Numbered from the stretch's first letter, positions 1,685 through 63,647 are shown. The stretch: 64,000 bases of DNA from IMGVR_UViG_3300023049_000005:1-64000, one strand, 5' to 3'. Translations and numbers: made by a program. Notes: generated from the sequence alone by a model not told the origin.

Positions 1685-2278
1685 TTAGGCTGTGTTTCCC
1701 TGTCTGTCTAATATTTTTAAAAGTTCTTCCTTCCTAACGAATTTAGGAAAGTTTTCCGTTTCTTCTCTATTGACTAATTCCCACTCATTTTTATTAGAGG
1801 TCTGATATAGAAATGATTCACCTTCTTCCTCAATTTCTATTGTTCTATTAGTTAACTTATCATAGAAGTTAGAAAACTCACCATTTATTTGGTATAATTT
1901 AACACTATTCCAATCTTGTTGCGTAGAATTAAATGTTTGGATGAAAATATAATCAGGGTCTTGTAGGTCTGTTTTATTATTAGATCTTACTAACAAAAAT
2001 TTAAATGGGTTCAATAAGAAGGTTTCATAATCATCCGTTAATTCGACTACTCCTCTTTTAAGATTTTTTAATCTTAATATTTTTTGAAACTCACTATTAT
2101 TATCAAGATTTTCTAAATCTGTTATATCTATATCACCAATGAAGCTTTCTATATTAAGTAGCTCTGCTTGGACACTATCTAATATACTTTTCTCAACAAC
2201 CGATAACTTTTCTAATAGTTCATCCATTGTGCTAGGTTCTTCGATTTTAAATGATTCAAAGGTTCTAAGGTGCTTCAT
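1685..2278 (-). CDS. hypothetical protein with N-terminal capsid-targeting-like motif
   Basis: 197 aa, starts MKHLRTFESF; TAATATATA 4 nt before ATG. Confidence 0.75.
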   Translation of the reverse strand: MKHLRTFESFKIEEPSTMDELLEKLSVVEKSILDSVQAELLNIESFIGDIDITDLENLDNNSEFQKILRLKNLKRGVVELTDDYETFLLNPFKFLLVRSNNKTDLQDPDYIFIQTFNSTQQDWNSVKLYQINGEFSNFYDKLTNRTIEIEEEGESFLYQTSNKNEWELVNREETENFPKFVRKEELLKILDRQGNTA

Positions 2279-2291
2279 ATACTATATATTA

Positions 2292-2558
2292 TTACTTACT
2301 AATCATTTTTACTTCAATAGTAGAATCGTTATCCCATTCATAAGTATGATCATCAAAGGATATCATTTCTATATGAATATACTTAGTATTACTATCAGAT
2401 TCCAAACAAAAAGAACCATTGAAATCAGTATAAGTTGTGTCTATATTATTATAGACCTTAGCTCCAACGATATCATAGTTATTTTTATCGTGAACATTAC
2501 CCGTTATTATGACGGGGGTTAAAAATTGAATTATTACATTAAGGTATATTAAAATCAT
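2292..2558 (-). CDS. small CarboxypepD_reg-like domain protein
   Basis: ITGNVHD..IVGAKV..TYTDFNGSFCL pattern after a hydrophobic N-terminus. Confidence 0.55.
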   Translation of the reverse strand: MILIYLNVIIQFLTPVIITGNVHDKNNYDIVGAKVYNNIDTTYTDFNGSFCLESDSNTKYIHIEMISFDDHTYEWDNDSTIEVKMISK

Positions 2559-2589
2559 GTCTTATATATTATTTATGAAGTATATATAT

Positions 2590-2598
2590 TAATATATA
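2590..2598 (+). promoter_or_regulatory. putative late promoter box TAATATATA (representative of at least 18 copies)
   Basis: WATATATA exactly 4 nt upstream of 16 start codons in the window. Confidence 0.7.
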
Positions 2599-2602
2599 CT
2601 TC

Positions 2603-3943
2603 ATGAGATACTTAAAAAATTTAGAACTTTTCTTAGAGTCAACTAAGAGTAATACAAACCTGATTACTGATATATGTATTGCTATGTTATTGATCAACCC
2701 TGACTTCCTTAATAGTATATTAGACAAGGGAATGCATACAAGATATAAGTATAATAACTTAGTGTTTATCAATGATCTGAAACAACTTTTAATGAAGGAA
2801 AATAGATTAATTTTAGGTAAAAAGAACGAAGAAACAGGTAGATATGAAGAAGAAGATAATATCGGTAAGATTAATTCTTATTTCAATGATCACTCTAAGG
2901 AGTTCAATATCGAAAAAGATTTCAAAAAGTTAGAGAAAGCAAGAAATATCGCAAGAAACATACAAGATAAATTATTAGTAGAAGATAAACTAAGAGCAGA
3001 AATGGTTCAGAAAGTTTATTGGATCAGTCCTAATAAAGAAAGAGGAATAAAAGAAGATATCGTTATAGAACTAGTGGGCAGTAAACAATATCCTATCGTA
3101 GTTAATAGTAATATAAATAGTTCTAAAACTAAGAGCTTTAATACATTATTAGACGTAATGTTAGATAGTGATGCTGATATACTATTCTCTGATAAGTACA
3201 TCGATCTTTGGGATAAACTTACAGTGAATTGGTTCAATGCAGTTTATAAAAACGCTAAAACAGATTATAAGATAATGATCGATCAATTCATAGATGCTTC
3301 TAGGGCAGATAGTTTAACTTTTTTCGATTACCAAAACATCGAAATATTAGACGAAAAATATAAGATATTGGGTCAATTCTTTGCGCCTTTAAATAAGAAT
3401 TATAAAGAACTACCTAAATTAATGAATGATATTTGGAAAGATAGAAAGAAAAGTATCAACAATTATCAAGAAGTAGAAAAAGAATGGGATGAAACTAAGA
3501 AAGTTTTATTAAATAATAGAATCATTGAAGATATTATCATCGGTAGTATAGAAGAATTAATAGAAGGTGAAATAAAAAAAGATGAAAATAAATTTATCAT
3601 TGCTAATAATAAAATAAAGTCTAGGTTATTAAGACTTATATTAGATATTATCTCTGTTGAAGATATCGATGTATATTATGCAGGTTCTTCAAGTTTTTAT
3701 CACTTACCATCTAAGAAATGGTTCAGGGATAACTATAATAGACTTACAGTGAAGTATGATTATCATCAAGAATTGAGTGATGATAATGATTCTCAATTTG
3801 ATATTAGAATCGAATTAGACGAGAAACCATTAATGGATCTTGAAATAAGAACAGGATTTACTAGTAATGAAATGGGGAACAAACTTAGTAGTAAAATTAA
3901 GATCAACTACACTTCTAATTTCAATCAGAAAGTTAAACAATAA
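2603..3943 (+). CDS. hypothetical protein, probable internal virion protein
   Basis: 446 aa, starts MRYLKNLELFLES; late box upstream. Confidence 0.8.
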   Translation: MRYLKNLELFLESTKSNTNLITDICIAMLLINPDFLNSILDKGMHTRYKYNNLVFINDLKQLLMKENRLILGKKNEETGRYEEEDNIGKINSYFNDHSKEFNIEKDFKKLEKARNIARNIQDKLLVEDKLRAEMVQKVYWISPNKERGIKEDIVIELVGSKQYPIVVNSNINSSKTKSFNTLLDVMLDSDADILFSDKYIDLWDKLTVNWFNAVYKNAKTDYKIMIDQFIDASRADSLTFFDYQNIEILDEKYKILGQFFAPLNKNYKELPKLMNDIWKDRKKSINNYQEVEKEWDETKKVLLNNRIIEDIIIGSIEELIEGEIKKDENKFIIANNKIKSRLLRLILDIISVEDIDVYYAGSSSFYHLPSKKWFRDNYNRLTVKYDYHQELSDDNDSQFDIRIELDEKPLMDLEIRTGFTSNEMGNKLSSKIKINYTSNFNQKVKQ

Positions 3944-3945
3944 AA

Positions 3946-7437: not shown

Positions 7438-8166
7438 TTAACCAAATTTAAGTTCATTCATTCGATCTACACACATAGAAGTATAAATTTTATAATCCAT
7501 TCCATATGATCCAATAGCCCACATATCATTAACTTCTATTAACATAGTCTCACCTTTATCATTAACACCTACATCTAATGTATATGCGATTGGAGAACTA
7601 TCATAATCTCTAATCATCTTTTCAACAAGAGAAGCATCAATATACTTTCTGAAATCACCCGCATAATATTGGATTCCTTTAAGTTCCTTTTTATGAACAA
7701 AACACCTATATTCTGAAACTATATTAATAGGATCACTGATATAAAGTTCCATATCATTTGTAAGATCACAGTAATCTCTCATAAACTTCAATGATTCTTC
7801 TTTCTCGATTAATTCACCCGTAAAAAGTTTAACATCATCAGCAGGTTTTATAAAAAATGGATAATCTTTAGTGTTATTATTTAGATTACTTTTTGTAATA
7901 TCTCTCTTTAAATACTTTTTTAGTGTATCAGGATATCCTAAGTACTTAGGTACTTCTATATCTATCTTATTGAAGAAATCGGTTGTAGCCTGTACAGAAG
8001 CTATAATAATATCTGATTCTTTATATACAGGAACAGAAATCATATCCGTAAACGGAACTACTTTAAACCCCCTGTTATATAGCTCGTTATGGCATATATA
8101 CACGAAATCATCAAACCATTCGTCGTTGACAGGATCTTTCTCTAAAAAGGCTCTTTTTTCTTTCAT
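7438..8166 (-). CDS. ATP-grasp domain protein (DUF4343/R2K-like)
   Basis: FIKP..KLFTG, EYRCFV, AYTLDVG, LIEVND..AIGSYG. Confidence 0.8.
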   Translation of the reverse strand: MKEKRAFLEKDPVNDEWFDDFVYICHNELYNRGFKVVPFTDMISVPVYKESDIIIASVQATTDFFNKIDIEVPKYLGYPDTLKKYLKRDITKSNLNNNTKDYPFFIKPADDVKLFTGELIEKEESLKFMRDYCDLTNDMELYISDPINIVSEYRCFVHKKELKGIQYYAGDFRKYIDASLVEKMIRDYDSSPIAYTLDVGVNDKGETMLIEVNDMWAIGSYGMDYKIYTSMCVDRMNELKFG

Positions 8167-8194: not shown

Positions 8195-8884
8195 ATGAAC
8201 TATTTAAAACTATTTGAAAATTGGTATGATAATAGAACAATTAAAGGGAGGAAAGATTATTCTCAAATAAATTTAGATTGGTCTAAGTTCCTAAAAGATG
8301 TTGATTACACATTCGATATTATTAAACAAGTCAATCCTAGATTGGAAACTCAATGGATAGAGCCTTTTGGTAATTACCTGACATTAATAGAAGGCGGTGA
8401 ATTAGATGATTATCATGAGATAGAAACCATCGAAGAATACGAAAACAGTTATATAAAACAACCTATTAAAGATTATATAAAGTTATTTAAGAAAACCAAG
8501 GATCGAGGATATTTGGAGGTAACTAGGATATTGACTGTTGATGATTTAAGTGAAATTGATTTTAGTAAAATAGGTAAGTATTGGTCATTCTGCGATAACC
8601 CAAGTCAAAAATTTGATAATATCTACAAAAAACAATATATCAAATTAATAGCTAAAGCTAGATTAGATAGTATAGATTGGTTAAATAGTTTAGACAATTA
8701 TGTATATTATGGGGATGATGAATGTGAGATAACACTAAGAGAAGGCGCATCTATTTTCATTGAAAAGATGATAAACGATAAAAGAACTCCTAGTGATTAT
8801 AAGACTAAGAAGGATAATAAAACTTTTTATAATTTTACAGGAAATAAGGAAACTATCGATTTAAATAAGAAGGCTAAAATTTAA
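8195..8884 (+). CDS. hypothetical protein with capsid-targeting-like motif
   Basis: Starts MNYLKLFENW; AAATATATA 4 nt before ATG. Confidence 0.75.
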   Translation: MNYLKLFENWYDNRTIKGRKDYSQINLDWSKFLKDVDYTFDIIKQVNPRLETQWIEPFGNYLTLIEGGELDDYHEIETIEEYENSYIKQPIKDYIKLFKKTKDRGYLEVTRILTVDDLSEIDFSKIGKYWSFCDNPSQKFDNIYKKQYIKLIAKARLDSIDWLNSLDNYVYYGDDECEITLREGASIFIEKMINDKRTPSDYKTKKDNKTFYNFTGNKETIDLNKKAKI

Positions 8885-15224: not shown

Positions 15225-15812
15225 ATGAAATTAGACATAGGTAAGACATACGTAGCTTTTCGGATAAAAAAAGATAAACCATTGGCGTTCGGTTTTTATA
15301 TTAAACCTGCTTATTATAGTGAATGGGAGAAGGGAGAAGAATGGATAAGTTTTATAGAAACTAATATATTAGATAATATCAAAGATATTAAAGTGGATGT
15401 TCAAGAAGATTATCTAATTAAACAAATCCGAAGTAGGACTACGGGTGAATATGTAATGGATTATAAAGATCTTGATAAAAAATTAGAAAATAAAATAGGT
15501 GACCTATTTTATTCATTTAGAGAACAACTTGATCTTGATTTTAATGGTGATGAGACTTTGTTTTTTAGATATAAAGGTTGGAATGTAGAATATCATACAC
15601 CTAAAGAATATATATCTAATTTCTATAAAGGTGATTATTTTGATAATAATTTTTTCTGTATTCCGTTAGATGTTGCTAAAAAAGACTATCCTTTTATGTT
15701 TATTTCTGATTATAATTCATCGGAAGAAGGGGCGTTACCATTTTTAAATGAAAACAATAGGAAGTTTATAGTAAGAGATTATAAGATTAAACAAGTATTA
15801 GACCTCTGTTAA
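15225..15812 (+). CDS. hypothetical protein with C-terminal RDxxI tag
   Basis: Ends RDYKIKQVLDLC; the track TTG start is upstream of the promoter box. Confidence 0.75.
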   Translation: MKLDIGKTYVAFRIKKDKPLAFGFYIKPAYYSEWEKGEEWISFIETNILDNIKDIKVDVQEDYLIKQIRSRTTGEYVMDYKDLDKKLENKIGDLFYSFREQLDLDFNGDETLFFRYKGWNVEYHTPKEYISNFYKGDYFDNNFFCIPLDVAKKDYPFMFISDYNSSEEGALPFLNENNRKFIVRDYKIKQVLDLC

Positions 15813-16543: not shown

Positions 16544-16759
16544 TTATTTATCTAATCTTCTTTCTATTTCTGTCTCTAATTCACTTAATGAATAGTTACT
16601 AGTATTTAATTTTTCTCCATATGGTGAATAATGATCATCTCTTACTGCATTCTCATAGAAATCTAAAAGTGATTGAGTTGACATATCTTCTAATTTACTT
16701 TCCTGATCAGGATTATATCTTTCGTTAAACTTGTCTATCTTCTTCATCTTATTTTTCAC
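16544..16759 (-). CDS. small protein with capsid-targeting-like motif
   Basis: MKKIDKFNER near the N-terminus. Confidence 0.65.
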   Translation of the reverse strand: MKNKMKKIDKFNERYNPDQESKLEDMSTQSLLDFYENAVRDDHYSPYGEKLNTSNYSLSELETEIERRLDK

Positions 16760-21275: not shown

Positions 21276-21339
21276 AATATTATAATATTTATTTACACTA
21301 TATATTATTTATTCTATATCCAATTTTAATATATAAGAT

Positions 21340-24411: not shown

Positions 24412-24445
24412 TAGTATTTAAATAATAAAAATAAACAGATAGATT

Positions 24446-25858: not shown

Positions 25859-25861
25859 AAA

Positions 25862-26230: not shown

Positions 26231-26260
26231 ACAACAATAAACAACTTGAACGATTAAATA

Positions 26261-27319: not shown

Positions 27320-27320
27320 T

Positions 27321-30726: not shown

Positions 30727-31470
30727 TTATTGTTTAAATCTTTTGTAACTTTTAATGTAACTTTCGTTTATTTCGACTTCTTCTAAGGCTTCATTATAAG
30801 AATTCTTTACAAAATCTAAGATATATGTATTTTCTATAAACGCATATACAAAATCTGTCTTATATTTTTCAGGATCTTCTAAATTAGATAAAATATAATT
30901 TAACATTACTGCAACTACATATTCTTCATCTTCTATCTTATTTTCTAATATCTTTTCTATATCTTGTATAGAATTTGGCATAAATGAAATAAAACCTGAT
31001 CTAGAACGATATGTCTCATGTAAGTATTCATTGAAATCATCCTCTTTTATTTTAGATTTGAATTTATTCCAAAACGTTTTAACATCTTCATTTAAATAAA
31101 TATCAAAATATAAGTTATCCGTAGTATAATTATATGATTTAGGACTCACTATTTTTATAACTTTTCCTGAATCAATAAAAGAAACTTTCTTTTTCATATC
31201 AGGTAAGTAACTTTCATTGAATATTTTTTTAGCACATTCTAATACATGTTCTTCAAAAACATCGTTATCAAAATGATCGTAATAAAAATCTCTATATGCA
31301 TCAGCGTCTTCAAAACGATCTTGTAATTCTATACTTCCTTCGTATTCACTACTAAAATCATCAATAGTAAAAAGATTATCAGGACTGTAAGATTGGTACA
31401 TATCAACTGATATGAAAGGAACTAATTCTGTAGTAAGTTCAACTTTATATAACTCATTATTAATAAACAT
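30727..31470 (-). CDS. hypothetical protein (late); capsid-targeting-like motif at the C-terminus
   Basis: TAATATATA-N4-ATG; ends INESYIKSYKRFKQ. Confidence 0.7.
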   Translation of the reverse strand: MFINNELYKVELTTELVPFISVDMYQSYSPDNLFTIDDFSSEYEGSIELQDRFEDADAYRDFYYDHFDNDVFEEHVLECAKKIFNESYLPDMKKKVSFIDSGKVIKIVSPKSYNYTTDNLYFDIYLNEDVKTFWNKFKSKIKEDDFNEYLHETYRSRSGFISFMPNSIQDIEKILENKIEDEEYVVAVMLNYILSNLEDPEKYKTDFVYAFIENTYILDFVKNSYNEALEEVEINESYIKSYKRFKQ

Positions 31471-31485
31471 ATCTTATATATTAAA

Positions 31486-31959
31486 TTACTTATTTAGTTT
31501 TAGTATTAAATCAGTAATAAGTAATTTACCATATTCGGCTATTTCTTCATCTGTTAGCTTATCCCTTACTCTTTTATCACGTAATAAAAGTATTACTATA
31601 TCATCATGACCTCTCTTTGCTGCCCATCGTATAGCCATATTATTTATTGTACTAGGATCAACTCTTGGATCTTTAAGTAATAGTTTAACAATTTCTAGAT
31701 GATTCGATTCTGCTGCTAATCGTATAGCATAGTTTTTTTCATCACTAGGATCAACTCTATCATCTTTTAATAACTCTCGGACTACTTCTATATGACCATT
31801 ACAAGATGCCCATACTATACCATTATTTCCATTATTACTAGGATCAACTCTTGGGTCTTTTAAAAACAATTTAACTAAATTTAGATCACCTATTTTACAA
31901 GCCTCAATAAATTCTTGTTGTTTATTATCTGATTCGAATAGTTTATAACTTTTAATTAT
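31486..31959 (-). CDS. ankyrin repeat protein with non-canonical or disrupted start
   Basis: LLKDxRVDPS ankyrin repeats; the frame extends upstream of TTG 31869 as IIKSYKLFESDNKQQEFIEACKIGDLNLVKL, with no ATG/GTG. Confidence 0.75.
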   Translation of the reverse strand: MIKSYKLFESDNKQQEFIEACKIGDLNLVKLFLKDPRVDPSNNGNNGIVWASCNGHIEVVRELLKDDRVDPSDEKNYAIRLAAESNHLEIVKLLLKDPRVDPSTINNMAIRWAAKRGHDDIVILLLRDKRVRDKLTDEEIAEYGKLLITDLILKLNK

Positions 31960-32022
31960 AAACTGATCTAATTTATCACGTATTTATATAACTATTCTAT
32001 TTTAGTTATATATTAAATATAA

Positions 32023-33261: not shown

Positions 33262-33681
33262 ATGGTAATTTTTAATCTACTTACACTTGTTTATATCATT
33301 TCTCATCTAAAGATAGCGTTGAATCCTGATTTGTTGATTAGTGGTTATAATGAAGTAAACGAAAGAAGTGAAGCTATAAAAGAAGGACGTGAGTTAAAAA
33401 AACTAACTAAGGAAACTATAACAATAACAAGAATTAGTATACTTACTTTGATATGGAGAATTAGTGGATTATTAACATCCGATTGGATTATATTTTTAAT
33501 TTATAACATATATATCCAAGTCTATTCTCTTTTTATGAAGAAAAAAAGAGGCACACCTTCTTATAGAACAGCCATTGTTATTACTTCATATATAGCTTTT
33601 TCTTTTTCTACTATATTATTTTTGAAGAATATCTTCTTTGAAAATATGAATGTTTCGGAAAAAATTATCGCTTTATTTTGA
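33262..33681 (+). CDS. hypothetical membrane protein
   Basis: Several hydrophobic segments; TACCTTTG at 33230-33237 favours ATG 33262. Confidence 0.6.
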   Translation: MVIFNLLTLVYIISHLKIALNPDLLISGYNEVNERSEAIKEGRELKKLTKETITITRISILTLIWRISGLLTSDWIIFLIYNIYIQVYSLFMKKKRGTPSYRTAIVITSYIAFSFSTILFLKNIFFENMNVSEKIIALF

Positions 33682-34873
33682 TCTTAATTGTGATCCAAAA
33701 TTTAGAAGCGTCTATATTGAAAAGTACTTTCTTATCTATTTTCTTTTTCTTACAATAAGAGATAAATTCGTTTCTTACTTTATCTAAACTTTCTTTCTCT
33801 ATAATACCGTCTTTCCATTCTCCCATACCGTAGTACCTTTGTATGATAGATTTATCTTTGATATAAGGATTAGTCTTTTTCTCAAAATAACCAGGTGAGA
33901 AATCAGACATCAGCTTCTTAATTTTCATATGAGAAATAACATCTTCCTTTGATAAACTATCAATATCATCTCTTAACTGTTGTAATACTTTACCTTTACT
34001 ATCCTTAAGTTCTTTGAAGTTTCTTTTAGAAAGTTTATATTCACCTACTTTTATTTTCTGATCACTATCATCTATATTAATACCATACTCTAAGAATAGA
34101 GAAGTAGTATAAGTTATTCCGAAATATAATTTAATGCTGCCTTGTGACTGAGTTATATAATCTGAAATTTGTTCCATTGATTTAAATCGCTCTAAGATAG
34201 AAAGTAACCTTTCTTTATTAACTGATTCAGTGATATAAAAAGAAAAGAAACTATTAGGGCATCTATCTTCTTCTTTTGTTAATTCAGGAAGTGATAATGC
34301 TGTTAATATTTTTAAGAAACTATTGAATCCTGTTTTATTAAGTACTATTAAGTTTTTAATATTAAGATCTTCGAATTTATTACTTTCTTCTATTTTAAAG
34401 TTATCATTGATCGATTTAACTAATGCCATTTGATCATAAGGATTAAGTATATTTACTGCCTTAGAAATACGAATTGAAGTATCAACTGATTTATCATTAA
34501 ATCTTTTTCTGTAATGATCAATAATATCTTCCTTTTTTAATGTTTCATTAGGTGCATTTTGTATATCACTTTCGTTGATATTATGACTAACTATATAACT
34601 TCTTCCTTTCTTCTCAACTATTTTAACAGGTGTTAACATGTTGTTATACCAATACTCAGTAAGGACTATATCATTTTCATCAAATTTCTTTGAATCGTTT
34701 TTACCCACAGGTAGTTTAAGATATTCCCCAAGGATTCTTGAAAAGTCTTCTTTTTCTTCATTCTTAATATTATCATATACGTGTTCAACATATTCACCAA
34801 GTGAACCGTATTCATTTTTAATATCAGCGTATATTCCTTCGTTTATTTTAAAGTTATTGAATTTGGTAATCAT
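33665..34873 (-). CDS. hypothetical protein with capsid-targeting-like motif
   Basis: Starts MITKFNNFKINEG; TAATATATA-N4-ATG. Confidence 0.8.
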   Translation of the reverse strand: MITKFNNFKINEGIYADIKNEYGSLGEYVEHVYDNIKNEEKEDFSRILGEYLKLPVGKNDSKKFDENDIVLTEYWYNNMLTPVKIVEKKGRSYIVSHNINESDIQNAPNETLKKEDIIDHYRKRFNDKSVDTSIRISKAVNILNPYDQMALVKSINDNFKIEESNKFEDLNIKNLIVLNKTGFNSFLKILTALSLPELTKEEDRCPNSFFSFYITESVNKERLLSILERFKSMEQISDYITQSQGSIKLYFGITYTTSLFLEYGINIDDSDQKIKVGEYKLSKRNFKELKDSKGKVLQQLRDDIDSLSKEDVISHMKIKKLMSDFSPGYFEKKTNPYIKDKSIIQRYYGMGEWKDGIIEKESLDKVRNEFISYCKKKKIDKKVLFNIDASKFWITIKIKIKR

Positions 34874-34888
34874 ATCTTATATATTAAA

Positions 34889-36320
34889 CTATTGATTTAA
34901 CTTTGTTAACATATCACCCACATATGGTTTAGTTATTTTGAGAAGTTCCTTTTCTGTTAACTTTTCTCTCACTCTTTCGTCTCTCAATAATTGTAATATT
35001 AATTCTTTTTCGTCCTTAAAGTCTCTTAGTGTTCTATTTAAAACATAATTAGAATTAGCACTTGGATCAACTCTATCGTCTTTTAATAACACCTTCACTA
35101 AATCTATTTCACCTACAAAAATTGCATTTCCTATAATAATATTATCATTAACACTTGGATCAACTCTATCATCTTTTAATAATAATCTTACGATATTAAA
35201 ATAGCCTTTTTTAGATGCTTCTATTATGTTTATATTATCACCATCACTAGGATCAACTCTATCATCTTTCATCAATAGGCTTACTAATGCCATATCTCCC
35301 CTCTCCACTGCTGCCCTTATAGTCCAATTATTCACATCAGTTGGATCTACTTTAGGGTGTTTTAATAACATATGCACTATCGAAATTTCTCCATATAATG
35401 ATGCCATTCGTATAGCGTAGTTAGCCTCTATACTAGGATCAACTCTTTTATCATTTAGTAAAAGTTTAACTACTTTGATATGTCCGTTTTCTGCTGCACT
35501 TTTTATAGCTTTACCACCTTTAGCATTAGGATTAACTTCCTCAAATCCTAATAAATATTCTACTACTTCGGGGTTATTGTTATTCGCAGCTATTCTTATA
35601 GCTTGGTCTTCAAATGCTGTTGGGTCTAAATCATATTCTTCTATAAATAATTTAACTAAATTTAGATGACCCCAAGCTGCTGCTGATATTAAATTATTTT
35701 CAGTAGGAAGATTCCCTGTTTCGATTATTTTTTTAATCATTTCCATATCAACATTAGGCTTCTCTATTTCTAACATTAAAGCCATCTCATGTTTGAGGTC
35801 TTCAATGAAATTATCTTCATTTAATTTTTGGATCATACTACTAACAAGTGGTCTACCTTTAGCATATCTCTTAATTTCTTTTTTAGATAAATGTTTATAT
35901 ACCTCAGGTTGATTGAGTAGTAGATATACCACATCATCATGACCATTTTCATATGCGTATTCTATGGGAGTATTACTATCTAAATATCCACTTGCGTTAA
36001 ACCTGCCGTCTTTTAAAAGTAATTTAATAATTTCTAAATAACCTTCTTGTGCAGCCGTTTCTATTAAATCGTGTTCTCTTCTTTTATCTACCCCTTTATA
36101 TCTTAATAGAAACTTCAGAAGTTCAGGTTGATTCATACGAACTGCATAATATATAGGTGAATTTTTATTAGTAGTTGGTTTAATTTTTTCTTTACGAATC
36201 ATTTTTTTTAACATGTTCGATATCCCCCTCCATTGAAGCATATACTATTTGTTCCTTAGGGTCTAAAATATACCCCCCGTTTTTAGTAGTATATCCTTCA
36301 TATAATTTAATATATTTCAT
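34889..36320 (-). CDS. long ankyrin repeat protein, frameshifted at an A8 run near its 5' end
   Basis: Multiple DxRVDPS ankyrin repeats in 34889..36241; upstream 42-aa ORF 36192..36320 (MKYIKLYEGY...YASMEGDIEHVKK) joins in frame if T8 at 36202-36209 is T7. Confidence 0.8.
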
Positions 36321-44663: not shown

Positions 44664-45044
44664 GTGATCAAAAGTTATAAAATATTCGAATCAGATAATA
44701 AGGAACGAAGACTTAATCAAGCTGCTATAAAAGGAGATTTAAAAGAAGTAAAGAAATTACTTAACGACTCTGATGTAGATATAGAGCATTATGATAATTC
44801 CGCACTTTGGTATGCAGTAGCATATAATCGTTTAGATGTAATAAAAGAATTATTAAAAGACCCTAGAATTGATCCTACTTATGATAAGAACCGTGCTATT
44901 AAATTAGCATCATCAAATGGTGATGATGAGATAGTATTATTGTTGTTACATGACAAAAGAGTACAAAAAAGTCTATCTAAAAAAAAATTAGCAGAGTTTG
45001 GTAAACTACTTACTGCTGATTTGATAGTAAATCTAAATAAGTAA
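44664..45044 (+). CDS. ankyrin repeat protein with capsid-targeting-like motif
   Basis: TAATATATA-N4-GTG; MIKSYKIFESDNK; LLKDPRIDPT; paralog of the 31486 gene. Confidence 0.8.
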   Translation: MIKSYKIFESDNKERRLNQAAIKGDLKEVKKLLNDSDVDIEHYDNSALWYAVAYNRLDVIKELLKDPRIDPTYDKNRAIKLASSNGDDEIVLLLLHDKRVQKSLSKKKLAEFGKLLTADLIVNLNK

Positions 45045-46423: not shown

Positions 46424-46674
46424 TGAGTTCAAAACTATTAACCAAACAGTACTCGGTTATTAATACACCTATCACTAATGTGAATTTTGACGAACAAGAG
46501 ATCATTGATAACACTATGGTGTTAGAAACTGTGTTCGTTTGTGGAACAGTAGTAAAAACATTGAATGGTGGTAGGATAAAAGACAAGGAGATTGAGCATC
46601 TAAATGAAGATGATATTATCTCTGTTAATAATAGTCTATATAAAGTAGTGAATATTATAGAAGATTATAAGTAA
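46423..46674 (+). CDS. hypothetical protein
   Basis: Coupled to the clpP stop (TAATG). Confidence 0.6.
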   Translation: MSSKLLTKQYSVINTPITNVNFDEQEIIDNTMVLETVFVCGTVVKTLNGGRIKDKEIEHLNEDDIISVNNSLYKVVNIIEDYK

Positions 46675-47021
46675 TTTTCTATTTCAAATGGGAGGTTAGT
46701 TTTATCGAAAGTAACAGGTTTACTTAACATAAAGTTAGCTTCCCATAATTCACTTAAGCCTAATGTTTTCTTTTCTATTTTCTTCTCGTTTTGAGAAGTA
46801 ACTAAAGGTCTGATTGCAGTAACTACGTAATTACCATTAGTCGTTTCTTTATCGAAGTATAATTTTAAGACATCCCCTTTCTTAATATCAACATCTATTT
46901 CAATATCAGATCCTGCGAAAATATCTAATTTATAATTCTCTGTGAATTTAACTATCTCATATTTTCTAAACACAGTAGTATTAGATTCTAAGAATAATTT
47001 ATAATTTTTAATGTTCTTCAT
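46665..47021 (-). CDS. hypothetical protein with capsid-targeting-like motif
   Basis: Starts MKNIKNYKLFLES; TTATATATA-N4-ATG. Confidence 0.75.
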   Translation of the reverse strand: MKNIKNYKLFLESNTTVFRKYEIVKFTENYKLDIFAGSDIEIDVDIKKGDVLKLYFDKETTNGNYVVTAIRPLVTSQNEKKIEKKTLGLSELWEANFMLSKPVTFDKTNLPFEIENYL

Positions 47022-47095
47022 ATCCTATATATAAAAAAAAAGAATAGTATATTTGTATCTATGGGATATGATTATCACAAAGAAAATATTAGCAG

Positions 47096-48266: not shown

Positions 48267-50156
48267 TTATTCATCATCTTTCACTTCCTCAAAATCTACA
48301 TCATTGACTTCTTGTTCAGTGTTATCTGTTGAACCTTCCTCTGTATTAGATTCTTGTTCTTGTTGATATAACTTAGTAGAAATAGTAGACCAAGACTGTT
48401 GAAGATCTTCCATCAATGAATCAATAGAATCTAGATCTTTATTCTCATGTGCTTCTTTTAAAGCTTTAGACTTTTCTTCTAACTCAGTTCGATCAGAATC
48501 TTCTAACTTATCTTCGCTTTCTTTGATGAATTTCTCAGTTGAAAAAATTAACTGATCCGCAGAGTTTAGTTTATCAACTTCCTCTTTCTTTTTCTTATCA
48601 GCTTCTGCGTTTTCTTCCGCATCTTTCTTCATTTTCTCGATTTCTTCGTCTGACAGTTGACCGCCATTTTCGATTCTAATATCGTTTTCTTTACCCGTAG
48701 CTTTATCAACAGCTTTAACTGTTAATACACCATTAGCATCGATATTAAAACTAACTTCGATTTGTGGTACTCCTCTTGGAGATGGTGGAATTCCATCTAA
48801 GTGAAACGTACCTAGTGTCTTATTGTCGGTAAAGAACTCACGTTCTCCTACACCAACATTAATCTGAACACTTGGTTGATTATCACTAGCCGTACTATAC
48901 ACTTCCTTCTTTTCAGCAGGGATAGTAGTATTGGCTTCGATCATCTTAGTGAATACACCACCCATTGTTTCAATACCCATACTCATTGGAGTAACATCCA
49001 ATAGAAGAATATCTTCTACTTCATTGTTTAATACACCACCTTGTATAGCAGCACCTAGAGATACGACCTCATCAGGGTTAACACTCTTATTGGGTGCTTT
49101 ACCAAAGAATTTTTCAACAGCTTCTTGTACAGCAGGAATTCTAGTAGATCCACCCACTAAGATTATCTCATCGATATCACTATTCTTAATACCTGCGTTT
49201 TTCATTGCGTTCTTACACGGCTTCAAAGTTCTAGCAATAAATGAATCGATCAATTTATTGAACTCACTTCTAGAAAGAGTTTTCACGTAATGTTTAGGAT
49301 TGTTATCTACTACCGTAATATAAGGCAAGTTAATTTCAGTTGAAGTAGTAGATGATAATTCTATCTTAGCTTTTTCAGCAGCTTCTTTCAATCTCTGTAA
49401 TGCCATAGAATCTTCTTTTAGATCCATACCATTTTCTTCTTTGAACCCATCATTTAACCAATCGATTAATATTTCATCTACATTATCACCACCTAAATGA
49501 ACATCACCATCAGTAGACTTAACCTCAAATACACCATCACCTAGATCTAAGATAGAGATATCAAATGTACCACCACCTAAATCATATACTGCGATAGTTT
49601 TATCTTCTTCGGTTTTATCTAAACCATATGCTAATGCTGCAGCAGTAGGCTCATTGATAATTCTTTTTACCTCAAGACCTGCAATTTTACCTGCCTCAAT
49701 AGTAGCGTTTCTTTCTTGGTCATTAAAGAAAGCAGGAACTGTAATCACACATTCCTTAACATCTTGTCCTAGATAAGACTCAGCAGATTTCTTTAACTTT
49801 TGTAATATCATTGAAGATATTTCTTGTGGTGTGTATTCTCTGTCTCCGATCTTTACCACAGGGATATTTGCTTTATTTTTCACTACTTTAAAAGAAACGT
49901 TTTTTATTTCGTTTTTTACTTCATTGTAGTTCTTCCCAATAAATCTTTTAATTGAGAATACTGTGCTTTCAGGATTGGTTACCATTTGTCTCTTAGCACT
50001 ATCTCCTACTTTTCTTTCACCATCTTCTCCAAATGCTACAATAGAAGGCGTAGTTCTTTTTCCTTCTTCGTTATTAATAACAGTAGCTTTACCGCTTTCG
50101 ATTACTGATACACAACTATTTGATGTACCTAAATCAATTCCTATAATTTTACCCAT
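48267..50156 (-). CDS. dnaK: Hsp70 chaperone DnaK
   Basis: [54 protein letters not shown]. Confidence 0.98.
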
Positions 50157-56814: not shown

Positions 56815-56815
56815 A

Positions 56816-57196
56816 TTAATTTAATAAATTATCAATAAAATCATCTCTCATTTCTTCAATCGGTTTAGAAACTTCTACTATCCAATCAGCAATCTCCCTA
56901 GTTTCTTTTCTACTTATATGTACCTCAGGTTTCTTGTGTGTACCCGCACCTATTATTTTTATTCTAGGGAAAAATTTTATATATCCTAATTCGTTTTTTT
57001 GGAATATTTGATCCTTAATATCAGAAGAGTAGTAAGAAGATTGTAGACAAACCTTATCTGTTACCGTGTTTACAAGAGATACAACAACTGTATATTTTTT
57101 AGACCAATGGCTATATGTTTTAATTACATAAACTTGATGTATATCGTCCTCTAATTTGAATTCATATACATATGAATCTATATCAAAATCTCCCAT
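56816..57196 (-). CDS. hypothetical protein with C-terminal RDxxID tag
   Basis: Ends RDDFIDNLLN. Confidence 0.7.
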   Translation of the reverse strand: MGDFDIDSYVYEFKLEDDIHQVYVIKTYSHWSKKYTVVVSLVNTVTDKVCLQSSYYSSDIKDQIFQKNELGYIKFFPRIKIIGAGTHKKPEVHISRKETREIADWIVEVSKPIEEMRDDFIDNLLN

Positions 57197-57734
57197 CTAA
57201 ATATGTTTTAAATACTTTGATAGGCATACACTTCTTTACCTTATCGTATTGTTTACTTTTCATATACTCTCTTATATCAGTAGATGACATCGGTATCATC
57301 CCATCTATTTGATCTATGATATCAATAGCAGAATCTTCTTTAACATATCCTTCCCTTAATGATTCAATGAACTTATATTGTTTTATCTCATCATAGTTCT
57401 TCCAATTATGTATATTATTAACAACATCAGTTCCTACTAATATAGCAATATCACCATACTTTTCCTTTAGTTTTCTAAGGGTTTTATATGTATAATTGGG
57501 TTTTGGTAGATCGTTTTCTATCAAGTTGACCTTTGTTTTAAGACCGAGTTCTTCTATTGATTGTTCTAACATCCTAACCCTCAGTTCAAATGGTAATATA
57601 TTATTAAGATCTTTATCAGGATTATGCGGAGAAACAACTATTTCCACATCATATCCTTTCTGTTCACAGCTAGTAATTTGTTGTAAATGTCCGTAATGAA
57701 CAGGAGAAAAAGAACCAAAATAGAATACTTTCAT
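57183..57734 (-). CDS. nadD: nicotinate/nicotinamide mononucleotide adenylyltransferase
   Basis: FGSFSPVHYGHL (HxGH), SPHNP.K, YTYKTL, VGTD..W, SSTDIR; TACATTTG 4 nt before ATG. Confidence 0.9.
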   Translation of the reverse strand: MKVFYFGSFSPVHYGHLQQITSCEQKGYDVEIVVSPHNPDKDLNNILPFELRVRMLEQSIEELGLKTKVNLIENDLPKPNYTYKTLRKLKEKYGDIAILVGTDVVNNIHNWKNYDEIKQYKFIESLREGYVKEDSAIDIIDQIDGMIPMSSTDIREYMKSKQYDKVKKCMPIKVFKTYLDGRF

Positions 57735-59272: not shown

Positions 59273-59815
59273 TTAAAGTGGTAAATCTTCATCACTTTCT
59301 TCTGATTCTTCTTCATCAGCTTCGTCAGCAACTTCTTCTTCTTCCTCAGGAATTTCTTCAAACATTCCGTCTTCTGTGTCGTCTTGTGGTAATTCAACGT
59401 CTTCTTCTTCCTCAGTTTCTTCTTCCTCAGCGTCTTCTTCCTCAGTTTCTTCCATCTCAATACCTTCTTCTGAAACCTCAGCGTCTTCTTCTTCTACCGA
59501 TACTTCCTCAGCATCATCTTCCATTTCTTCGTCAACGTTAATTAAGATATCCATTGGTAAAGTATCACCGTCAGCGTTTTCACCTACGATGTAATTTATG
59601 ATCATTGAAGCGATTGTTTCTTCGCTAAATTGTTTTCTAACGTCTTTCTTAGCTTCTTTCTTGATCTTAGATATTAATTTGTTTACCACACTTCTTTTAA
59701 GTTCGATACCGTTCACGATGAACTTATCTCCCATAGGTACAACCGACTCATTTAAGTTAGCTTCCCCTGTTCTTTTTTCTCTAAAGTCAGTAAATTTTTT
59801 TATAAAATTTGGCAT
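59273..59815 (-). CDS. protein with very acidic C-terminus, possible prohead core/internal protein
   Basis: MPNFIKKFTDF..NLNES; long E/D tail. Confidence 0.7.
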   Translation of the reverse strand: MPNFIKKFTDFREKRTGEANLNESVVPMGDKFIVNGIELKRSVVNKLISKIKKEAKKDVRKQFSEETIASMIINYIVGENADGDTLPMDILINVDEEMEDDAEEVSVEEEDAEVSEEGIEMEETEEEDAEEEETEEEEDVELPQDDTEDGMFEEIPEEEEEVADEADEEESEESDEDLPL

Positions 59816-62122: not shown

Positions 62123-62590
62123 TTGGAAAGAAAATGGGATAATATAGAATATGTTTTTCTTAAAAAGAAAAAAGCTAATGGTTTTCCTAATGGTCGAGAG
62201 ATCGGGGAAAAGCTAAAGGTTCTTGGTGTGTCCTATAGTAAGAACTATACATGTTTAATAATTAAAGGCAATAAAAATAATAACGATAGTTTCAAAATTC
62301 ATGAATCTTATGTAGATAATATAGCTGAGAAAAGAAATGATACTATTGTTTCCATCTTAACAGAAGGTCTAATATATTATTCTGATCATAAAAGACATCT
62401 AATTTGTTATCCGTATAGTATAGAGAATCTACATCTAATGGCAGAAGATTTACAGATAAACAATTGTTGGTTTCACAAAGATCATTATGATATACCCAAA
62501 AGAAGGATATCAGAGATAGCAAAAAAGACGGTGAATATTAGTAGTAAAGATATCGTAAGAATAATAAATGGAGAAAAATTATTTGTTTGA
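62123..62590 (+). CDS. two-domain protein with C-terminal DUF4031-like domain
   Basis: HL....IENLHLMA..L.I..CWFH.DHYDIP; RNDTIVSIL at the domain junction. Confidence 0.55.
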   Translation: MERKWDNIEYVFLKKKKANGFPNGREIGEKLKVLGVSYSKNYTCLIIKGNKNNNDSFKIHESYVDNIAEKRNDTIVSILTEGLIYYSDHKRHLICYPYSIENLHLMAEDLQINNCWFHKDHYDIPKRRISEIAKKTVNISSKDIVRIINGEKLFV

Positions 62591-62731
62591 TTTCTTGATA
62601 AGATCAATGAGTGAATAAACACAATCCCCCTCATATCTTTTCTTGTCCATCCTAGATATAGCCACGGCTATTTTATCTTCATAATATACATCAAAGACTT
62701 CGCCTTCTACATTTATTCTAATATTTCCCAT
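62579..62731 (-). CDS. 50-aa microprotein (not in ORF track)
   Basis: MGNIRINVEGEVFDVYYEDKIAVAISRMDKKRYEGDCVYSLIDLIKKSNK; TAATATATA-N4-ATG. Confidence 0.55.
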   Translation of the reverse strand: MGNIRINVEGEVFDVYYEDKIAVAISRMDKKRYEGDCVYSLIDLIKKSNK

Positions 62732-62748
62732 GGTCTATATATTACAGA

Positions 62749-62901
62749 TTAACAACCACAAAGTCTAATTTTTTGTATAAGATTCCAAGTACAGTTAGCT
62801 GTATATTCCTCACTTGTTTCGGGATCTTTTGCTGTGATACTATCAGAAGTTTCTTCTGATATTTCGTATATCTTATTATCTATGGTTATGCTAATTGTCA
62901 T
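62749..62901 (-). CDS. 50-aa microprotein (not in ORF track)
   Basis: MTISITIDNKIYEISEETSDSITAKDPETSEEYTANCTWNLIQKIRLCGC. Confidence 0.55.
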   Translation of the reverse strand: MTISITIDNKIYEISEETSDSITAKDPETSEEYTANCTWNLIQKIRLCGC

Positions 62902-62914
62902 ATCTTTATTGTTT

Positions 62915-63196
62915 TTAATCGGCATCTTCTATAGTAACAGAAAGACCCTGAGCTTGTAATTTTAATTTGATTTTCTTTAAATGGTCATCACTACCCTCAC
63001 ATACTCTAGTCTTTCCTTTATAGTGGACTTGTAACGTATGCTGCCATGCTGTTTCTTTATCCATCTTACAGATTTTGATAAGACAGCTATGTACGTGATC
63101 GAACGTATTGTAGTCATCGTTGTGTAGAATCACAACCTTTGGTCTACCCGTACTATCTTTAGTCTTTGACTTCTTTTTGGTAATTGTCTTTTCCAT
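62915..63196 (-). CDS. clpS: Clp protease adaptor ClpS
   Basis: VILHNDDYNTFDHV..CL, TLQVHYKGK. Confidence 0.88.
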   Translation of the reverse strand: MEKTITKKKSKTKDSTGRPKVVILHNDDYNTFDHVHSCLIKICKMDKETAWQHTLQVHYKGKTRVCEGSDDHLKKIKLKLQAQGLSVTIEDAD

Positions 63197-63230
63197 AACT
63201 TAATATATATTACAAAAGTAATTAAAAAAA

Positions 63231-63647
63231 ATGAAATTCATAAAAAAGATCAACGAATATTATAATAGTAGTGAACATTACTCACATAGTGATGAATATG
63301 GCTCAATAGAAGGCATAGTACATTATGATGAAGAAAAGGTGAGAAATAGATTTAGTAAAATGAGAGTTGATCCAAATGATTATATAGATGAGTTATTTTA
63401 CCCTGTTGCTTTTTTAAATAATATCAATATTAATGAAGAACATAGAAACAAAGGAGTTGGTGGTGCTATGTACTTTGATTTCGAATCTTTTTGTGAATTC
63501 AATGGGATAGAAAATATTGTATTAGAAGCCGATTTATTAGAAGCACAACAGGAAGGATTCGACCTGACTAAATGGTATAAGAAATTAGGTTTCGAAACAA
63601 TAGGGGAAACTAGCGACAATCCTATTATGGTCAAGTATTTAAGTTAA
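63231..63647 (+). CDS. GNAT-family acetyltransferase with capsid-targeting-like motif
   Basis: INEEHRNKGVG (motif A), WYKKLGF; starts MKFIKKINE. Confidence 0.75.
   Translation: MKFIKKINEYYNSSEHYSHSDEYGSIEGIVHYDEEKVRNRFSKMRVDPNDYIDELFYPVAFLNNININEEHRNKGVGGAMYFDFESFCEFNGIENIVLEADLLEAQQEGFDLTKWYKKLGFETIGETSDNPIMVKYLS

What the first reader, a model, noticed from the sequence alone, without database searches (positions are those of the whole stretch)
1685..63647. N-terminal capsid-targeting-like peptide on about 13 unrelated proteins
Seen: MKHLRTFES (2278), MRYLKNLELFLES (2603), MNYLKLFEN (8195), MKKIDKFNE (16747), MKIKRFEQFNES (17174), MITSFKVFEG (21340), IIKSYKLFES (31959), MITKFNNFKINEG (34873), MKYIKLYEG (36320), MIKSYKIFES (44664), MKNIKNYKLFLES (47021), MPNFIKKFTDF..LNES (59815) and MKFIKKINE (63231). 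A C-terminal copy (INESYIKSYKRF) is in 30727..31470. Most of these genes have the late box. Established: T4 internal proteins carry an ~10-aa capsid targeting sequence (MKTYQEFIAE type) cleaved after Glu by the prohead protease. Inference: a greatly expanded packaging tag that loads ankyrins, a GNAT and many unknown proteins into the head for injection.
Basis: partly seen in the sequence, partly recalled or inferred. Interest (0 to 1): 0.72.

Follow-up and report, generated by a model that had tools for sequence, protein, structure and literature searches.

The report
Shared cleavable head-targeting-like tag
A lake-water giant phage related to T4 puts the same short N-terminal peptide, ending in what looks like its head-protease cutting site, on about 40 otherwise unrelated late proteins. 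This is most simply read as a greatly expanded T4-style address label for loading cargo into the capsid, though no virion data exist.

Summary
All 13 N-termini and the C-terminal copy are in the sequence. A pattern taken from them is about 5-fold enriched at N-termini in the rest of the 270.8-kb genome, and is also enriched in 65 related contigs. It is not enriched in the AT-rich control phage PTm1. Variable codons and spacing show the constraint is on the peptide.

The genome is a T4-like huge phage (Gp23 capsid protein, gp21-type S77 protease fused to a scaffold), probably infecting Bacteroidota. The tag has two parts:
- a basic/aromatic element, M-K-x-(I/L)-K-x-(F/Y);
- a site, hydrophobic-x-Glu followed by Ser/Asn/Gly, at residues 8-14.

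The same site recurs at conserved positions in the scaffold (about ten 14-residue repeats, plus KLNE|S and KLFE|S), in the capsid protein's N-terminal domain, and at both ends of the protease domain.

Tagged genes are mostly unrelated and strongly linked to the late promoter box. About 110 of 120 orthologues of a tagged CCA-adding enzyme keep the tag, and AlphaFold leaves exactly residues 1-11 unfolded. Three proteins carry a mirrored C-terminal version.

Best reading (about 0.6): a T4-type capsid-targeting and cleavage tag, expanded to about 12% of genes. Packaging, cleavage and injection are inferred, not shown.

The parts
1685..2278 (-). 197-aa ORFan. Tag is MKHLRTFE|S (nt 2255-2278). The late box abuts the ATG.
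   Evidence: PSSM 16.2; no family
2603..3943 (+). 446-aa ORFan. Tag is MRYLKNLELFLE|S (nt 2603-2638). The late box abuts the ATG.
   Evidence: (14.8 bits with the foreign PSSM)
8195..8884 (+). 229-aa ORFan. Tag is MNYLKLFE|N (nt 8195-8218). The late box abuts the ATG.
   Evidence: 18.2
16544..16747 (-). 67-aa ORFan. Tag is MKKIDKFNE|R (nt 16721-16747). It has no box of its own and lies directly downstream of 16749-17174. Moderate member.
   Evidence: 6.4 bits
16749..17174 (-). 141-aa ORFan. Tag is MKIKRFEQFNE|S (nt 17142-17174). The late box lies about 21 nt upstream.
   Evidence: 20.3 bits
21340..21636 (+). 98-aa ORFan. Tag is MITSFKVFE|G (nt 21340-21366). The late box abuts the ATG.
30727..31470 (-). 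247-aa late protein with a mirrored C-terminal tag, ...EINE|SYIKSYKRFKQ*. The removable part is nt 30730-30762.
   Evidence: The same arrangement occurs in genome ORF 76998-77621 and in a protein of related locus L010.
31486..31959 (-). Ankyrin-repeat protein, paralogue of 44664-45044. The tag IIKSYKLFE|S starts at ATA, and there is no canonical start codon or adjacent late box. It may be a decayed copy.
   Evidence: no ATG variant in other samples
33665..34873 (-). 402-aa ORFan. Tag is MITKFNNFKINE|G (nt 34838-34873). The late box abuts the ATG. The orthologue in L006 (47% identity) has a different tag sequence but keeps the VNE|N site.
34889..36320 (-). Ankyrin-repeat gene in two frames. The tag piece is MKYIKLYE|G... 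(36320 down to the A8 run at 36202-36209). The 450-aa ankyrin ORF is 34889-36241. The late box abuts the ATG at 36320.
   Evidence: The run is one base shorter in runs X2 and X3.
44664..45044 (+). 126-aa ankyrin-repeat protein with a GTG start. Tag is (M)IKSYKIFE|S (nt 44664-44690). The late box abuts the start.
46665..47021 (-). 118-aa ORFan. Tag is MKNIKNYKLFLE|S (nt 46986-47021), the best match to the clade-wide tag. The late box abuts the ATG.
   Evidence: 27 bits
59273..59815 (-). 180-aa very acidic ORFan with a long tag. MPNFIKKFTDF... is followed by a NLNE|S site at residue 23 (nt 59747-59815). The orthologue in LR745206 starts MKHIRTYE|N and has a second site, IIKE|S. Moderate member.
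63231..63647 (+). 138-aa weak GNAT-like protein. Tag is MKFIKKINE|Y (nt 63231-63257). The late box lies about 22 nt upstream. Weakest member: P1' is Tyr, and the Pfam score is below cut-off.

Best explanation
The peptide is a two-part, removable address tag of the T4 capsid-targeting-sequence (CTS) kind, used on a much larger scale.

**Proposed mechanism**
1. Late in infection, about 40 proteins (about 12% of genes) are made with an 8-14-residue leader. They include ankyrin-repeat proteins, a CCA-adding/poly(A)-polymerase-like enzyme, a NUDIX hydrolase, a family of 600-1345-aa proteins and many ORFans. Most are made from a late promoter box that abuts the start codon.
2. The leader's basic/aromatic part, M-K-x-(I/L)-K-x-(F/Y), would bind the scaffolding core of the assembling prohead.
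3. The leader's end, a hydrophobic-x-Glu site before Ser/Asn/Gly, would be cut by the phage's gp21-type prohead protease. That protease would also chop the repeat-built scaffold and trim the capsid protein.
4. The mature cargo would stay in the head and would enter the host with the DNA.

**Shown:** the tag is real, peptide-level, modular, late-linked and clade-wide. It lies outside the fold of the one tagged enzyme modelled. The protease family is present. The same site recurs in bona fide protease substrates.

**Inferred:** binding to the scaffold, cleavage, residence in the virion and injection.
For: **Phage type**
- It is T4-like: a Gp23 capsid protein (1.8e-30) and Peptidase_S77 above cut-off, in a 748-aa protease-scaffold ORF with invariant His75 and Ser130/131.
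- T4 gp21 cuts after L/I-x-E. T4 CTSs are 10-19-residue N-terminal propeptides, with targeting residues 4 and 7 and processing residues 8 and 10 (PMC9026906).
- T4 IPII and IPIII begin MKTYQEFIAE|A.

**Enrichment and controls:**

**Peptide-level constraint**
- Ser at P1' is encoded by AGY 6 times and by TCN 5 times.
- P3 uses 8 different codons.
- The Glu sits anywhere from residue 8 to 16.

**The same P3-P1' signature in known substrate types**
- Protease N-terminus: I-x-E8|N, matching T4's LIE-9.
- Invariant (I/L)NE169|S at the end of the protease domain.
- About ten 14-residue scaffold repeats, each carrying (I/L)AE|N.
- KLNE430|S and KLFE437|S.
- The protease-scaffold ORF has 22 sites against 4.1 expected (p = 5e-10).
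- The capsid protein has LE16|N and NE40|N, invariant in 34 orthologues and also in PTm1.

**Late expression**
- Fisher p = 7e-6 for the link to the late box.
- The box also precedes the portal, tail sheath, baseplate hub and head-tail adaptor genes.

**Modularity:** only two paralogue groups among the candidates.

**Conservation:** about 110 of 120 CCA-enzyme orthologues at 45-53% identity keep the tag ...K(Y/F)xxFLE|S ahead of the conserved core.

**Structure:** the AlphaFold model has mean pLDDT 93.6, and only residues 1-11 (the tag) fall below 50.

**Mirrored C-terminal versions**
- Three proteins have the site first and then the targeting-like peptide at the very C-terminus. This is what a removable tag requires.
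- The targeting-like motif occurs 16 times in the proteome, 12 of them at termini.
Against: - There is no virion proteome, no N-terminal sequencing and no cultured close relative. Packaging and cleavage are therefore unobserved.
- The protease-plus-tag co-fold gave no answer.
- The tag has only pattern-level, not sequence-level, likeness to the T4 CTS. P3 is often Phe, and P2 is Phe/Leu/Asn rather than free.
- The mature parts of tagged proteins are more acidic than the rest of the proteome (-0.059 against -0.020 charge per residue, p = 0.008). T4 internal proteins are basic.
- Forty cargo species, including a CCA-adding enzyme, is far beyond T4 precedent.
- hydrophobic-x-Glu is a short motif, so some listed members must be chance. 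The PSSM false-discovery rate is about 20-25%. For example, genome ORF 101831, a homing-endonuclease-like gene, is not tagged in its orthologues.
- The phage also encodes ClpP and Hsp70, which could read N-terminal basic/hydrophobic peptides.
Confidence: 0.6

Rival explanations
1. The tag is a propeptide for the prohead interior only. Tagged proteins enter the prohead and are cut, but they act as accessory core or scaffold components, or stay inside the head. They are not injected effectors.
For: The cleavage-site evidence is the same as for the main explanation. The mature parts are acidic, like the very acidic scaffold C-terminal region, and unlike the basic T4 internal proteins. A paralogous family of large tagged proteins recalls the inner-body paralogue families of phiKZ-like phages (PMC5694885).
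Against: Enzymes such as the CCA-adding enzyme and NUDIX hydrolase, and the ankyrin-repeat proteins, make more sense as proteins acting in the host than as structural filler. The tagged set differs widely between relatives, as expected for arms-race cargo.
Confidence: 0.15
2. The tag is a recognition peptide for a chaperone or an ATP-dependent protease (phage Hsp70/DnaK or ClpP with a host unfoldase). It would control folding or timed degradation of late proteins, and would have nothing to do with the capsid.
For: The window encodes Hsp70 (48267-50156) and ClpP (45710-46423). From general knowledge, basic residues flanking a hydrophobic core is the DnaK-binding pattern, and Met-basic-hydrophobic N-termini can be ClpX signals.
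Against: This reading does not explain several findings:
- the near-invariant Glu followed by Ser/Asn;
- its identity with conserved sites in the scaffold, capsid protein and protease;
- the mirrored C-terminal arrangement, with the site placed between the protein and the peptide.

No Clp unfoldase (AAA_2) was found in the record.
Confidence: 0.08
3. The motif is a by-product of translation start on leaderless, AT-rich late mRNAs. It would be a codon-level requirement, not a protein signal.
For: The late box sits exactly 4 nt before the ATG in 44 genes, so many tagged genes are probably leaderless. The tag's residues (K, I, F, N, E, Y) have the most AT-rich codons. Lys is enriched at positions 2-6 in all genes.
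Against: - Shuffling residues 2-20 removes the signal.
- Codons and spacing vary.
- 36 of 54 box-adjacent genes lack the tag, and about 22 tagged genes are not box-adjacent.
- PTm1, an equally AT-rich phage of Flavobacteriia, shows no enrichment.
- C-terminal copies exist.
Confidence: 0.05
4. The pattern arises by chance or from composition in an AT-rich genome.
For: The motif is short and degenerate. Some listed members are weak (63231, 16544).
Against: Enrichment holds in held-out genes, in an independently trained PSSM and in relatives. Tag conservation across about 110 orthologues also argues against chance.
Confidence: 0.02

Closest known systems
T4 capsid targeting sequence (CTS) of internal proteins IPI/IPII/IPIII and Alt, cleaved by prohead protease gp21
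   Same: - A short N-terminal leader on otherwise unrelated proteins.
- It starts M-K and has aromatic residues three positions apart.
- It ends in hydrophobic-x-Glu.
- The phage has a gp21-family protease, a Gp23 capsid protein and a scaffold full of the same sites.
- T4 Alt and gp21 are also processed at the C-terminus (PMC9026906).
- T4 IPII and IPIII start MKTYQEFIAE|A.
   Different: - About 40 tagged genes here, against roughly 4-7 in T4.
- Tags of 8-14 residues in two length classes, against 10-19 residues in T4.
- P1' is Ser/Asn/Gly rather than Ala. P2 is biased to Phe/Leu/Asn.
- The cargo is acidic and includes recognisable enzymes and ankyrin repeats.
- The protease is fused to the scaffold.
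- Mirrored C-terminal tags occur.
- There is no experimental evidence.
Processed head and ejection proteins of phiKZ-like giant phages (phiKZ, 201phi2-1, SPN3US)
   Same: Dozens of head proteins are present, many cleaved after Glu by a gp21-related protease. Paralogue families with conserved N-termini occur, and the proteins are ejected into the host (PMC5694885, PMC9026906).
   Different: There the cleavage motif is S/A/G-x-E, and propeptides are mostly longer than 100 residues. No single short shared tag is known. Here the tag is short, uniform and readable from sequence.
Huge Bacteroidota phages from metagenomes (LR745206 and LR7565xx records; 'moraphages', PMC12619734)
   Same: The capsid protein is 48-58% identical to those of the 634-735-kb records. 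Early promoters look like the Bacteroidota type. The phage carries DnaK and comes from lake water. The tag is present in LR745206 and in IMG/VR relatives.
   Different: The one paper on these phages that I opened (the moraphage paper) does not mention an N-terminal tag; the term 'N-terminal' occurs 0 times. I did not test whether this record belongs to the moraphage lineage.

Membership tests
T4-type capsid targeting sequence | Short (10-19 residue) N-terminal propeptide on the protein | tested here: met
   The predicted P1 Glu falls at residue 8-14 in 36 of 37 curated genes. The AlphaFold model of the tagged CCA enzyme leaves only residues 1-11 unfolded.
T4-type capsid targeting sequence | Ends at a prohead-protease site (L/I-x-Glu in T4) | tested here: met
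   P3 is hydrophobic in 28 of 37, and P1' is Asn/Ser/Gly in 29 of 37. The same signature occurs at conserved positions in the scaffold, capsid protein and protease of 19-34 orthologues. Glu at P1 is partly by construction.
T4-type capsid targeting sequence | Phage encodes a gp21-family (S77) prohead protease, a T4-like capsid protein and a scaffold | tested here: met
T4-type capsid targeting sequence | Shared by proteins that are otherwise unrelated | tested here: met
   Only two paralogue groups among 52 candidates after trimming the tag. A PSSM trained on one foreign family finds unrelated genes.
T4-type capsid targeting sequence | Carrier proteins are made when proheads assemble (late) | tested here: inconclusive
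   There is a strong link to a promoter-like box that also precedes the portal, sheath, baseplate and adaptor genes. No transcript data exist: only DNA runs were found.
T4-type capsid targeting sequence | Carrier proteins are in the virion with the tag removed | not testable with these tools
   The phage is uncultured and no proteome exists.
T4-type capsid targeting sequence | The tag alone suffices to load a foreign protein into the head | not testable with these tools
   This needs a packaging assay. The co-fold of protease and tag gave no answer.
T4-type capsid targeting sequence | Sequence homology to the T4 CTS (MKTYQEFIAE) | tested here: not met
   Only pattern likeness was found: M-K, aromatic residues three positions apart, and hydrophobic-x-Glu. 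There is no alignable identity. This is analogy, or very distant kinship.
phiKZ-type long propeptides | Propeptides longer than 100 residues, cut at S/A/G-x-Glu | tested here: not met
   Tags are 8-14 residues long and P3 is hydrophobic.
Sec or lipoprotein signal peptide | Hydrophobic core of 7-15 residues after a basic N-terminus | tested here: not met
   Tags are 8-14 residues long and interrupted by Lys, Asn and Glu, with no hydrophobic run.

The most novel reading that the evidence does not exclude
A whole clade of uncultivated huge Bacteroidota phages uses one short, position-independent (N- or C-terminal) peptide to load dozens of different proteins into the capsid. The peptide may dock on the 14-residue repeats of the scaffold. 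If so, each phage's injected protein set can be read directly from its genome. That set would include RNA- and nucleotide-modifying enzymes (CCA-adding enzyme, NUDIX) and ankyrin-repeat proteins, delivered before any phage gene is expressed.
Probability: 0.4. Interest if true: 0.82.

Novelty: new variant of a known kind. Interest (0 to 1): 0.7.

Why it matters
If the reading is right, three things follow.
- The tag is a sequence-readable marker of the proteins a huge phage carries into its host. This class is normally found only by virion mass spectrometry of cultured phages. It could be applied to hundreds of metagenomic genomes with no cultured member.
- It would point to new anti-defence and host-takeover effectors. 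Examples are the ankyrin proteins, a packaged CCA-adding enzyme that could repair tRNAs cut by host anticodon nucleases, and a NUDIX hydrolase.
- It would show how far the T4 cargo-loading principle can be scaled, and would give a compact natural tag for loading proteins into large capsids.

The repeat-built scaffold and the mirrored C-terminal tags give concrete handles for testing how targeting works.

Tried and rejected
- **Unconstrained motif discovery.** Expectation-maximisation on all N-termini collapsed to a weak general Lys/Ile pattern. I replaced it with held-out regex and PSSM tests.
- **Relatives of tagged ORFans.** The search for related loci with two tagged ORFans (33665-34873 and 2603-3943) found no relatives.
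- **Family searches.** Pfam and PHROGs gave nothing for most tagged proteins. Atlas feature searches gave only sub-threshold leads, including an 'IpIV internal head protein' cluster at 0.69, which I do not use as evidence.
- **Solved structures.** PDB sequence and profile searches with the capsid protein found nothing. The capsid protein's maturation site was therefore inferred from conservation, not from alignment to T4 gp23.
- **Co-fold.** I re-sent it without them. The result was 'no answer' and is not used either way.
- **C-termini.** The cleavage pattern shows no overall enrichment at C-termini (6 against 9 expected). Only the combined site-plus-targeting motif is concentrated at termini.
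- **False positive.** Genome ORF 101831 (MEQKLLEIFE|S, after the capsid gene) was dropped because its orthologues lack the tag.
- **Literature.** One search was too loose and returned nothing relevant.
- **Transcripts.** Only DNA runs hold this phage, so transcript starts could not be checked.

Full report
**What the window is.** The 64-kb window is the first quarter of a 270,756-bp IMG/VR virus record (29% GC, CheckV completeness 89%).
- The record has a T4-type major capsid protein (Pfam Gp23, 1.8e-30, genome 100033-101745) and no NCLDV capsid.
- Upstream of the capsid gene are a portal gene and a 748-aa ORF. The N-terminal part of that ORF is a gp21-type prohead protease (Peptidase_S77, above cut-off). 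The rest is an acidic, repeat-rich scaffold.
- The capsid protein is 48-58% identical to those of 634-735-kb uncultured huge phages. It is about 29% identical to those of Tenacibaculum phage PTm1 and the Lak phages.
- Early genes carry a TAnnTTTG-like element just before the ATG, which looks like a Bacteroidota promoter.
- The sequence occurs in several lake-water metagenomes.
- The window also encodes a fused type II topoisomerase, Hsp70, ClpP, TelA, NAPRTase and a UvsW-like helicase.

**Checking the observation.** All 13 N-terminal peptides and the C-terminal copy are in the sequence. Four corrections:
- The 36320 peptide is on the minus strand. It sits in a 42-codon piece that is out of frame with the 450-aa ankyrin ORF 34889-36241. 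The frames change at an A8 run, 36202-36209.
- Contigs from two other lake samples have that run one base shorter, which places both pieces in one frame. The source sample agrees with the window. The tagged ankyrin gene is therefore intact elsewhere. Here it is either a homopolymer error or a real variant.
- The 31959 copy starts with ATA, and no ATG variant was seen. It may be a decayed paralogue.
- 44664 starts with GTG.

**Is it more than chance?**
- I derived the pattern [FLIV][FNL]E[SGN], with Glu at residues 6-17, from the window's examples. I tested it on the 256 genes outside the window: 13 hits against 2.9 expected (p = 1e-5).
- Genome-wide there are 19 hits. Protein interiors predict 3.9, and shuffling residues 2-20 of each protein predicts 3.75 (maximum 11 in 500 shuffles).
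- An iterated PSSM selects 29 genes against 6.7 expected.
- A fully independent PSSM was built only from the tags of CCA-enzyme orthologues in other phages. It finds 13 unrelated N-termini in this genome at 6 bits or more, against 0.5-1.1 expected.
- In 65 related IMG/VR loci plus LR745206, the pattern hits 81 of 1290 genes against 29 expected. Orthologues recurring across contigs inflate this count.
- PTm1, an equally AT-rich T4-like phage of Flavobacteriia, shows no enrichment (2 against 1.9) and no copy of the targeting-like motif in 145 genes.
- Codons vary: Ser after the Glu is AGY six times and TCN five times, and the hydrophobic P3 uses eight codons. The Glu lies anywhere from residue 8 to 16. 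The constraint is on the peptide, not on the DNA or mRNA.
- After removing the first 22 residues, only two paralogue groups remain among 52 candidates: the ankyrin pair and a family of 600-1345-aa proteins.

My curated list has 37 genes plus the three ankyrin genes, about 12% of 336 ORFs. I expect a fifth or so of the weaker members to be chance.

**Anatomy of the tag.** It has two parts.
- The first part is basic and aromatic: Lys or Arg at residue 2 in 21 of 37, Ile or Leu at residue 4 in 21 of 37, Lys at residue 5, then Phe or Tyr.
- The second part is hydrophobic-x-Glu followed by Asn, Ser or Gly. P3 is hydrophobic in 28 of 37, P2 is mostly Asn, Phe or Leu, and P1' is Asn/Ser/Gly in 29 of 37.
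- Lengths cluster at 8-9 and 11-14 residues.
- The motif [IL]K.[FY][KNEQ].[FY] occurs 16 times in the whole proteome: 9 at N-termini, 3 in the last 15 residues and 4 inside proteins. In relatives the split is 16, 3 and 6.
- Two C-terminal copies here are each directly preceded by a hydrophobic-Asn-Glu|Ser site: window 30727-31470...EINE|SYIKSYKRFKQ, and genome 76998-77621...GVNE|SKGIKRFKDFN. One in relative L010 (...SLAE|SLKYLKRFNDF) is preceded by a Leu-Ala-Glu|Ser site.
- With the peptide at the C-terminus, the site lies between it and the protein. That order is what a removable targeting peptide needs.

**Link to the prohead protease.** T4 gp21 cuts after L/I-x-Glu. T4 CTSs are 10-19-residue N-terminal propeptides. 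Residues 4 and 7 of the IPIII CTS direct targeting, and residues 8 and 10 direct processing. gp21 itself carries LIE-9 (PMC9026906). T4 IPII and IPIII begin MKTYQEFIAE|A.

In this clade, alignments of 19 protease-scaffold and 34 capsid orthologues show conserved Glu positions with hydrophobic P3 and small or polar P1':
- I-x-E8|N at the protease N-terminus, which matches T4's LIE-9;
- an invariant (I/L)NE169|S at the end of the protease domain, kept as ISE|S in PTm1;
- VNE273|N;
- about ten tandem 14-residue scaffold repeats, each with (I/L)AE|N;
- KLNE430|S and KLFE437|S;
- in the capsid protein, (V/I)LE16|N and (I/L)NE40|N, both invariant.

The protease-scaffold ORF holds 22 such sites against 4.1 expected (p = 5e-10). 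KLFE|S and (F/L/I)NE|S are exactly the endings of the tags. This is the strongest indirect evidence that the tags are substrates of the prohead protease. In T4 that protease is active only inside the prohead.

**Timing.** The box AATATATA lies exactly 4 nt before the ATG in 44 genes. It lies 18-28 nt upstream of others, including the portal, tail sheath, baseplate hub and head-tail adaptor genes. It therefore behaves as the late promoter.
- 13 of 19 strict tag hits have the box, against 72 of 336 genes overall (Fisher p = 7e-6).
- With a looser pattern, 18 of 54 box-adjacent genes are tagged, against 16 of 249 genes without a box.

**What is tagged.** Most are ORFans with no Pfam or PHROG family. 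Recognisable ones are:
- three ankyrin-repeat proteins;
- a weak GNAT;
- a NUDIX hydrolase, whose domain starts at residue 19;
- a CCA-adding/poly(A)-polymerase-like enzyme, whose domain starts at residue 37.

For the last enzyme, about 110 of the 120 best homologues in public data carry the tag. They are 45-53% identical and include one on a 642-kb phage contig. Each begins M-(I/K)-I-(K/T)-K-(Y/F)-x-x-F-L-E|S, then has a few variable residues, then the conserved core. Three gene calls start at a Met just after the tag. An AlphaFold model built on 57 of these has mean pLDDT 93.6, and only residues 1-11 (the tag) fall below 50. The tag is thus a conserved, unfolded add-on to a normal enzyme. 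Where orthologues of other tagged genes exist, the tag sequence drifts but the pattern stays (33665-34873 against L006; 59273-59815 against LR745206).

**Interpretation.** The simplest account is a T4-style capsid-targeting and cleavage tag, expanded about ten-fold. I give it about 0.6. The steps not shown are binding to the scaffold, cleavage, presence in virions and injection.

Points against:
- The mature cargo is acidic on average, unlike T4 internal proteins.
- The cargo number is very large.
- hydrophobic-x-Glu is a short motif.
- The co-fold was uninformative.

Rivals:
- A propeptide for internal head components that are not injected (0.15).
- A chaperone or degradation signal read by the phage Hsp70 or ClpP (0.08). 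This does not explain the Glu-Ser/Asn site or its mirror-image placement at C-termini.
- A translation effect on leaderless late mRNAs (0.05). The shuffles, the codon variation, untagged leaderless genes, the PTm1 control and the C-terminal copies all argue against it.
- Chance (0.02).

**Novelty.** The T4 CTS and the diversity of T-even internal proteins are well known (PMC3012670, PMC9026906). So are the many cleaved head proteins of phiKZ-like phages (PMC5694885). I found no report of a uniform short tag on about 12% of a phage's genes, conserved across a clade of huge Bacteroidota phages, with C-terminal mirror forms. The paper on related aquatic 'moraphages' does not mention it. My literature searches were limited to the held library. 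I rate this a new variant of a known kind.

Noticed in passing
genome-wide; e.g. window 2279-2295, 21324-21339, 34874-34889, 47022-47037: The late box AATATATA lies exactly 4 nt before the ATG in 44 genes, so these late mRNAs are probably leaderless or nearly so. Structural genes carry the same box 18-28 nt upstream. That gives two classes of late transcription unit.
   Followed up: partly
window 36202-36209: An A8 run splits the tagged ankyrin gene 34889-36320 (minus strand) into two frames, both in this assembly and in the source sample. Contigs from two other lake metagenomes have the run one base shorter, which gives one continuous frame.
   Followed up: yes
genome 97691-99937 (outside the window), residues about 290-420: The scaffold part of the protease-scaffold fusion is built of about ten tandem 14-residue repeats (D-Y-I/L-A-E-N-L-x-K-S-I-E-Y-S). 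Each carries a predicted protease site. A very acidic Asp/Glu-rich stretch follows.
   Followed up: partly
window 45710-46423 and 48267-50156: The phage encodes ClpP (Pfam 5e-60) and a full-length Hsp70/DnaK. No Clp unfoldase domain (AAA_2) was found in the record.
   Followed up: partly
window 17209-20445: All type II topoisomerase domains (GyrB-like ATPase, Toprim, GyrA-like) are fused in a single 1078-aa protein, including the TOPRIM_C domain. T4 splits this enzyme into several genes.
   Followed up: no
window 31400-32400: The ankyrin and tag region shows strain-level rearrangement joints and many loose contig ends across the lake metagenomes. It looks like a hypervariable spot.
   Followed up: no
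genome 257164-258222 (outside the window), residue 262: A complete second tag preceded by Met (MSKIKKFEAFVE|S) lies inside a 352-aa ORF that also has an N-terminal tag. It could be a fusion of two tagged genes, an internal start, or a protein cut in two.
   Followed up: no
window 23056-28664: A block of four genes lies next to each other on the plus strand: a MoxR-like AAA ATPase, a DUF2201 metallopeptidase/VWA protein, TelA (Pfam 6e-87) and a 447-aa unknown.
   Followed up: no
window 7438-8166, 15225-15812, 57183-57734 and others: Non-late genes have a TAnnTTTG-like element a few bases before the ATG. This looks like the Bacteroidota -7 promoter element, and fits a Flavobacteriia-type host and very short leaders on early genes as well.
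   Followed up: no
genome 267108-267533 (outside the window): A tagged 141-aa protein (MKHIKLFE|N...) matches Pfam DUF6576 at residues 8-36 (5e-9), directly after the tag.
   Followed up: no
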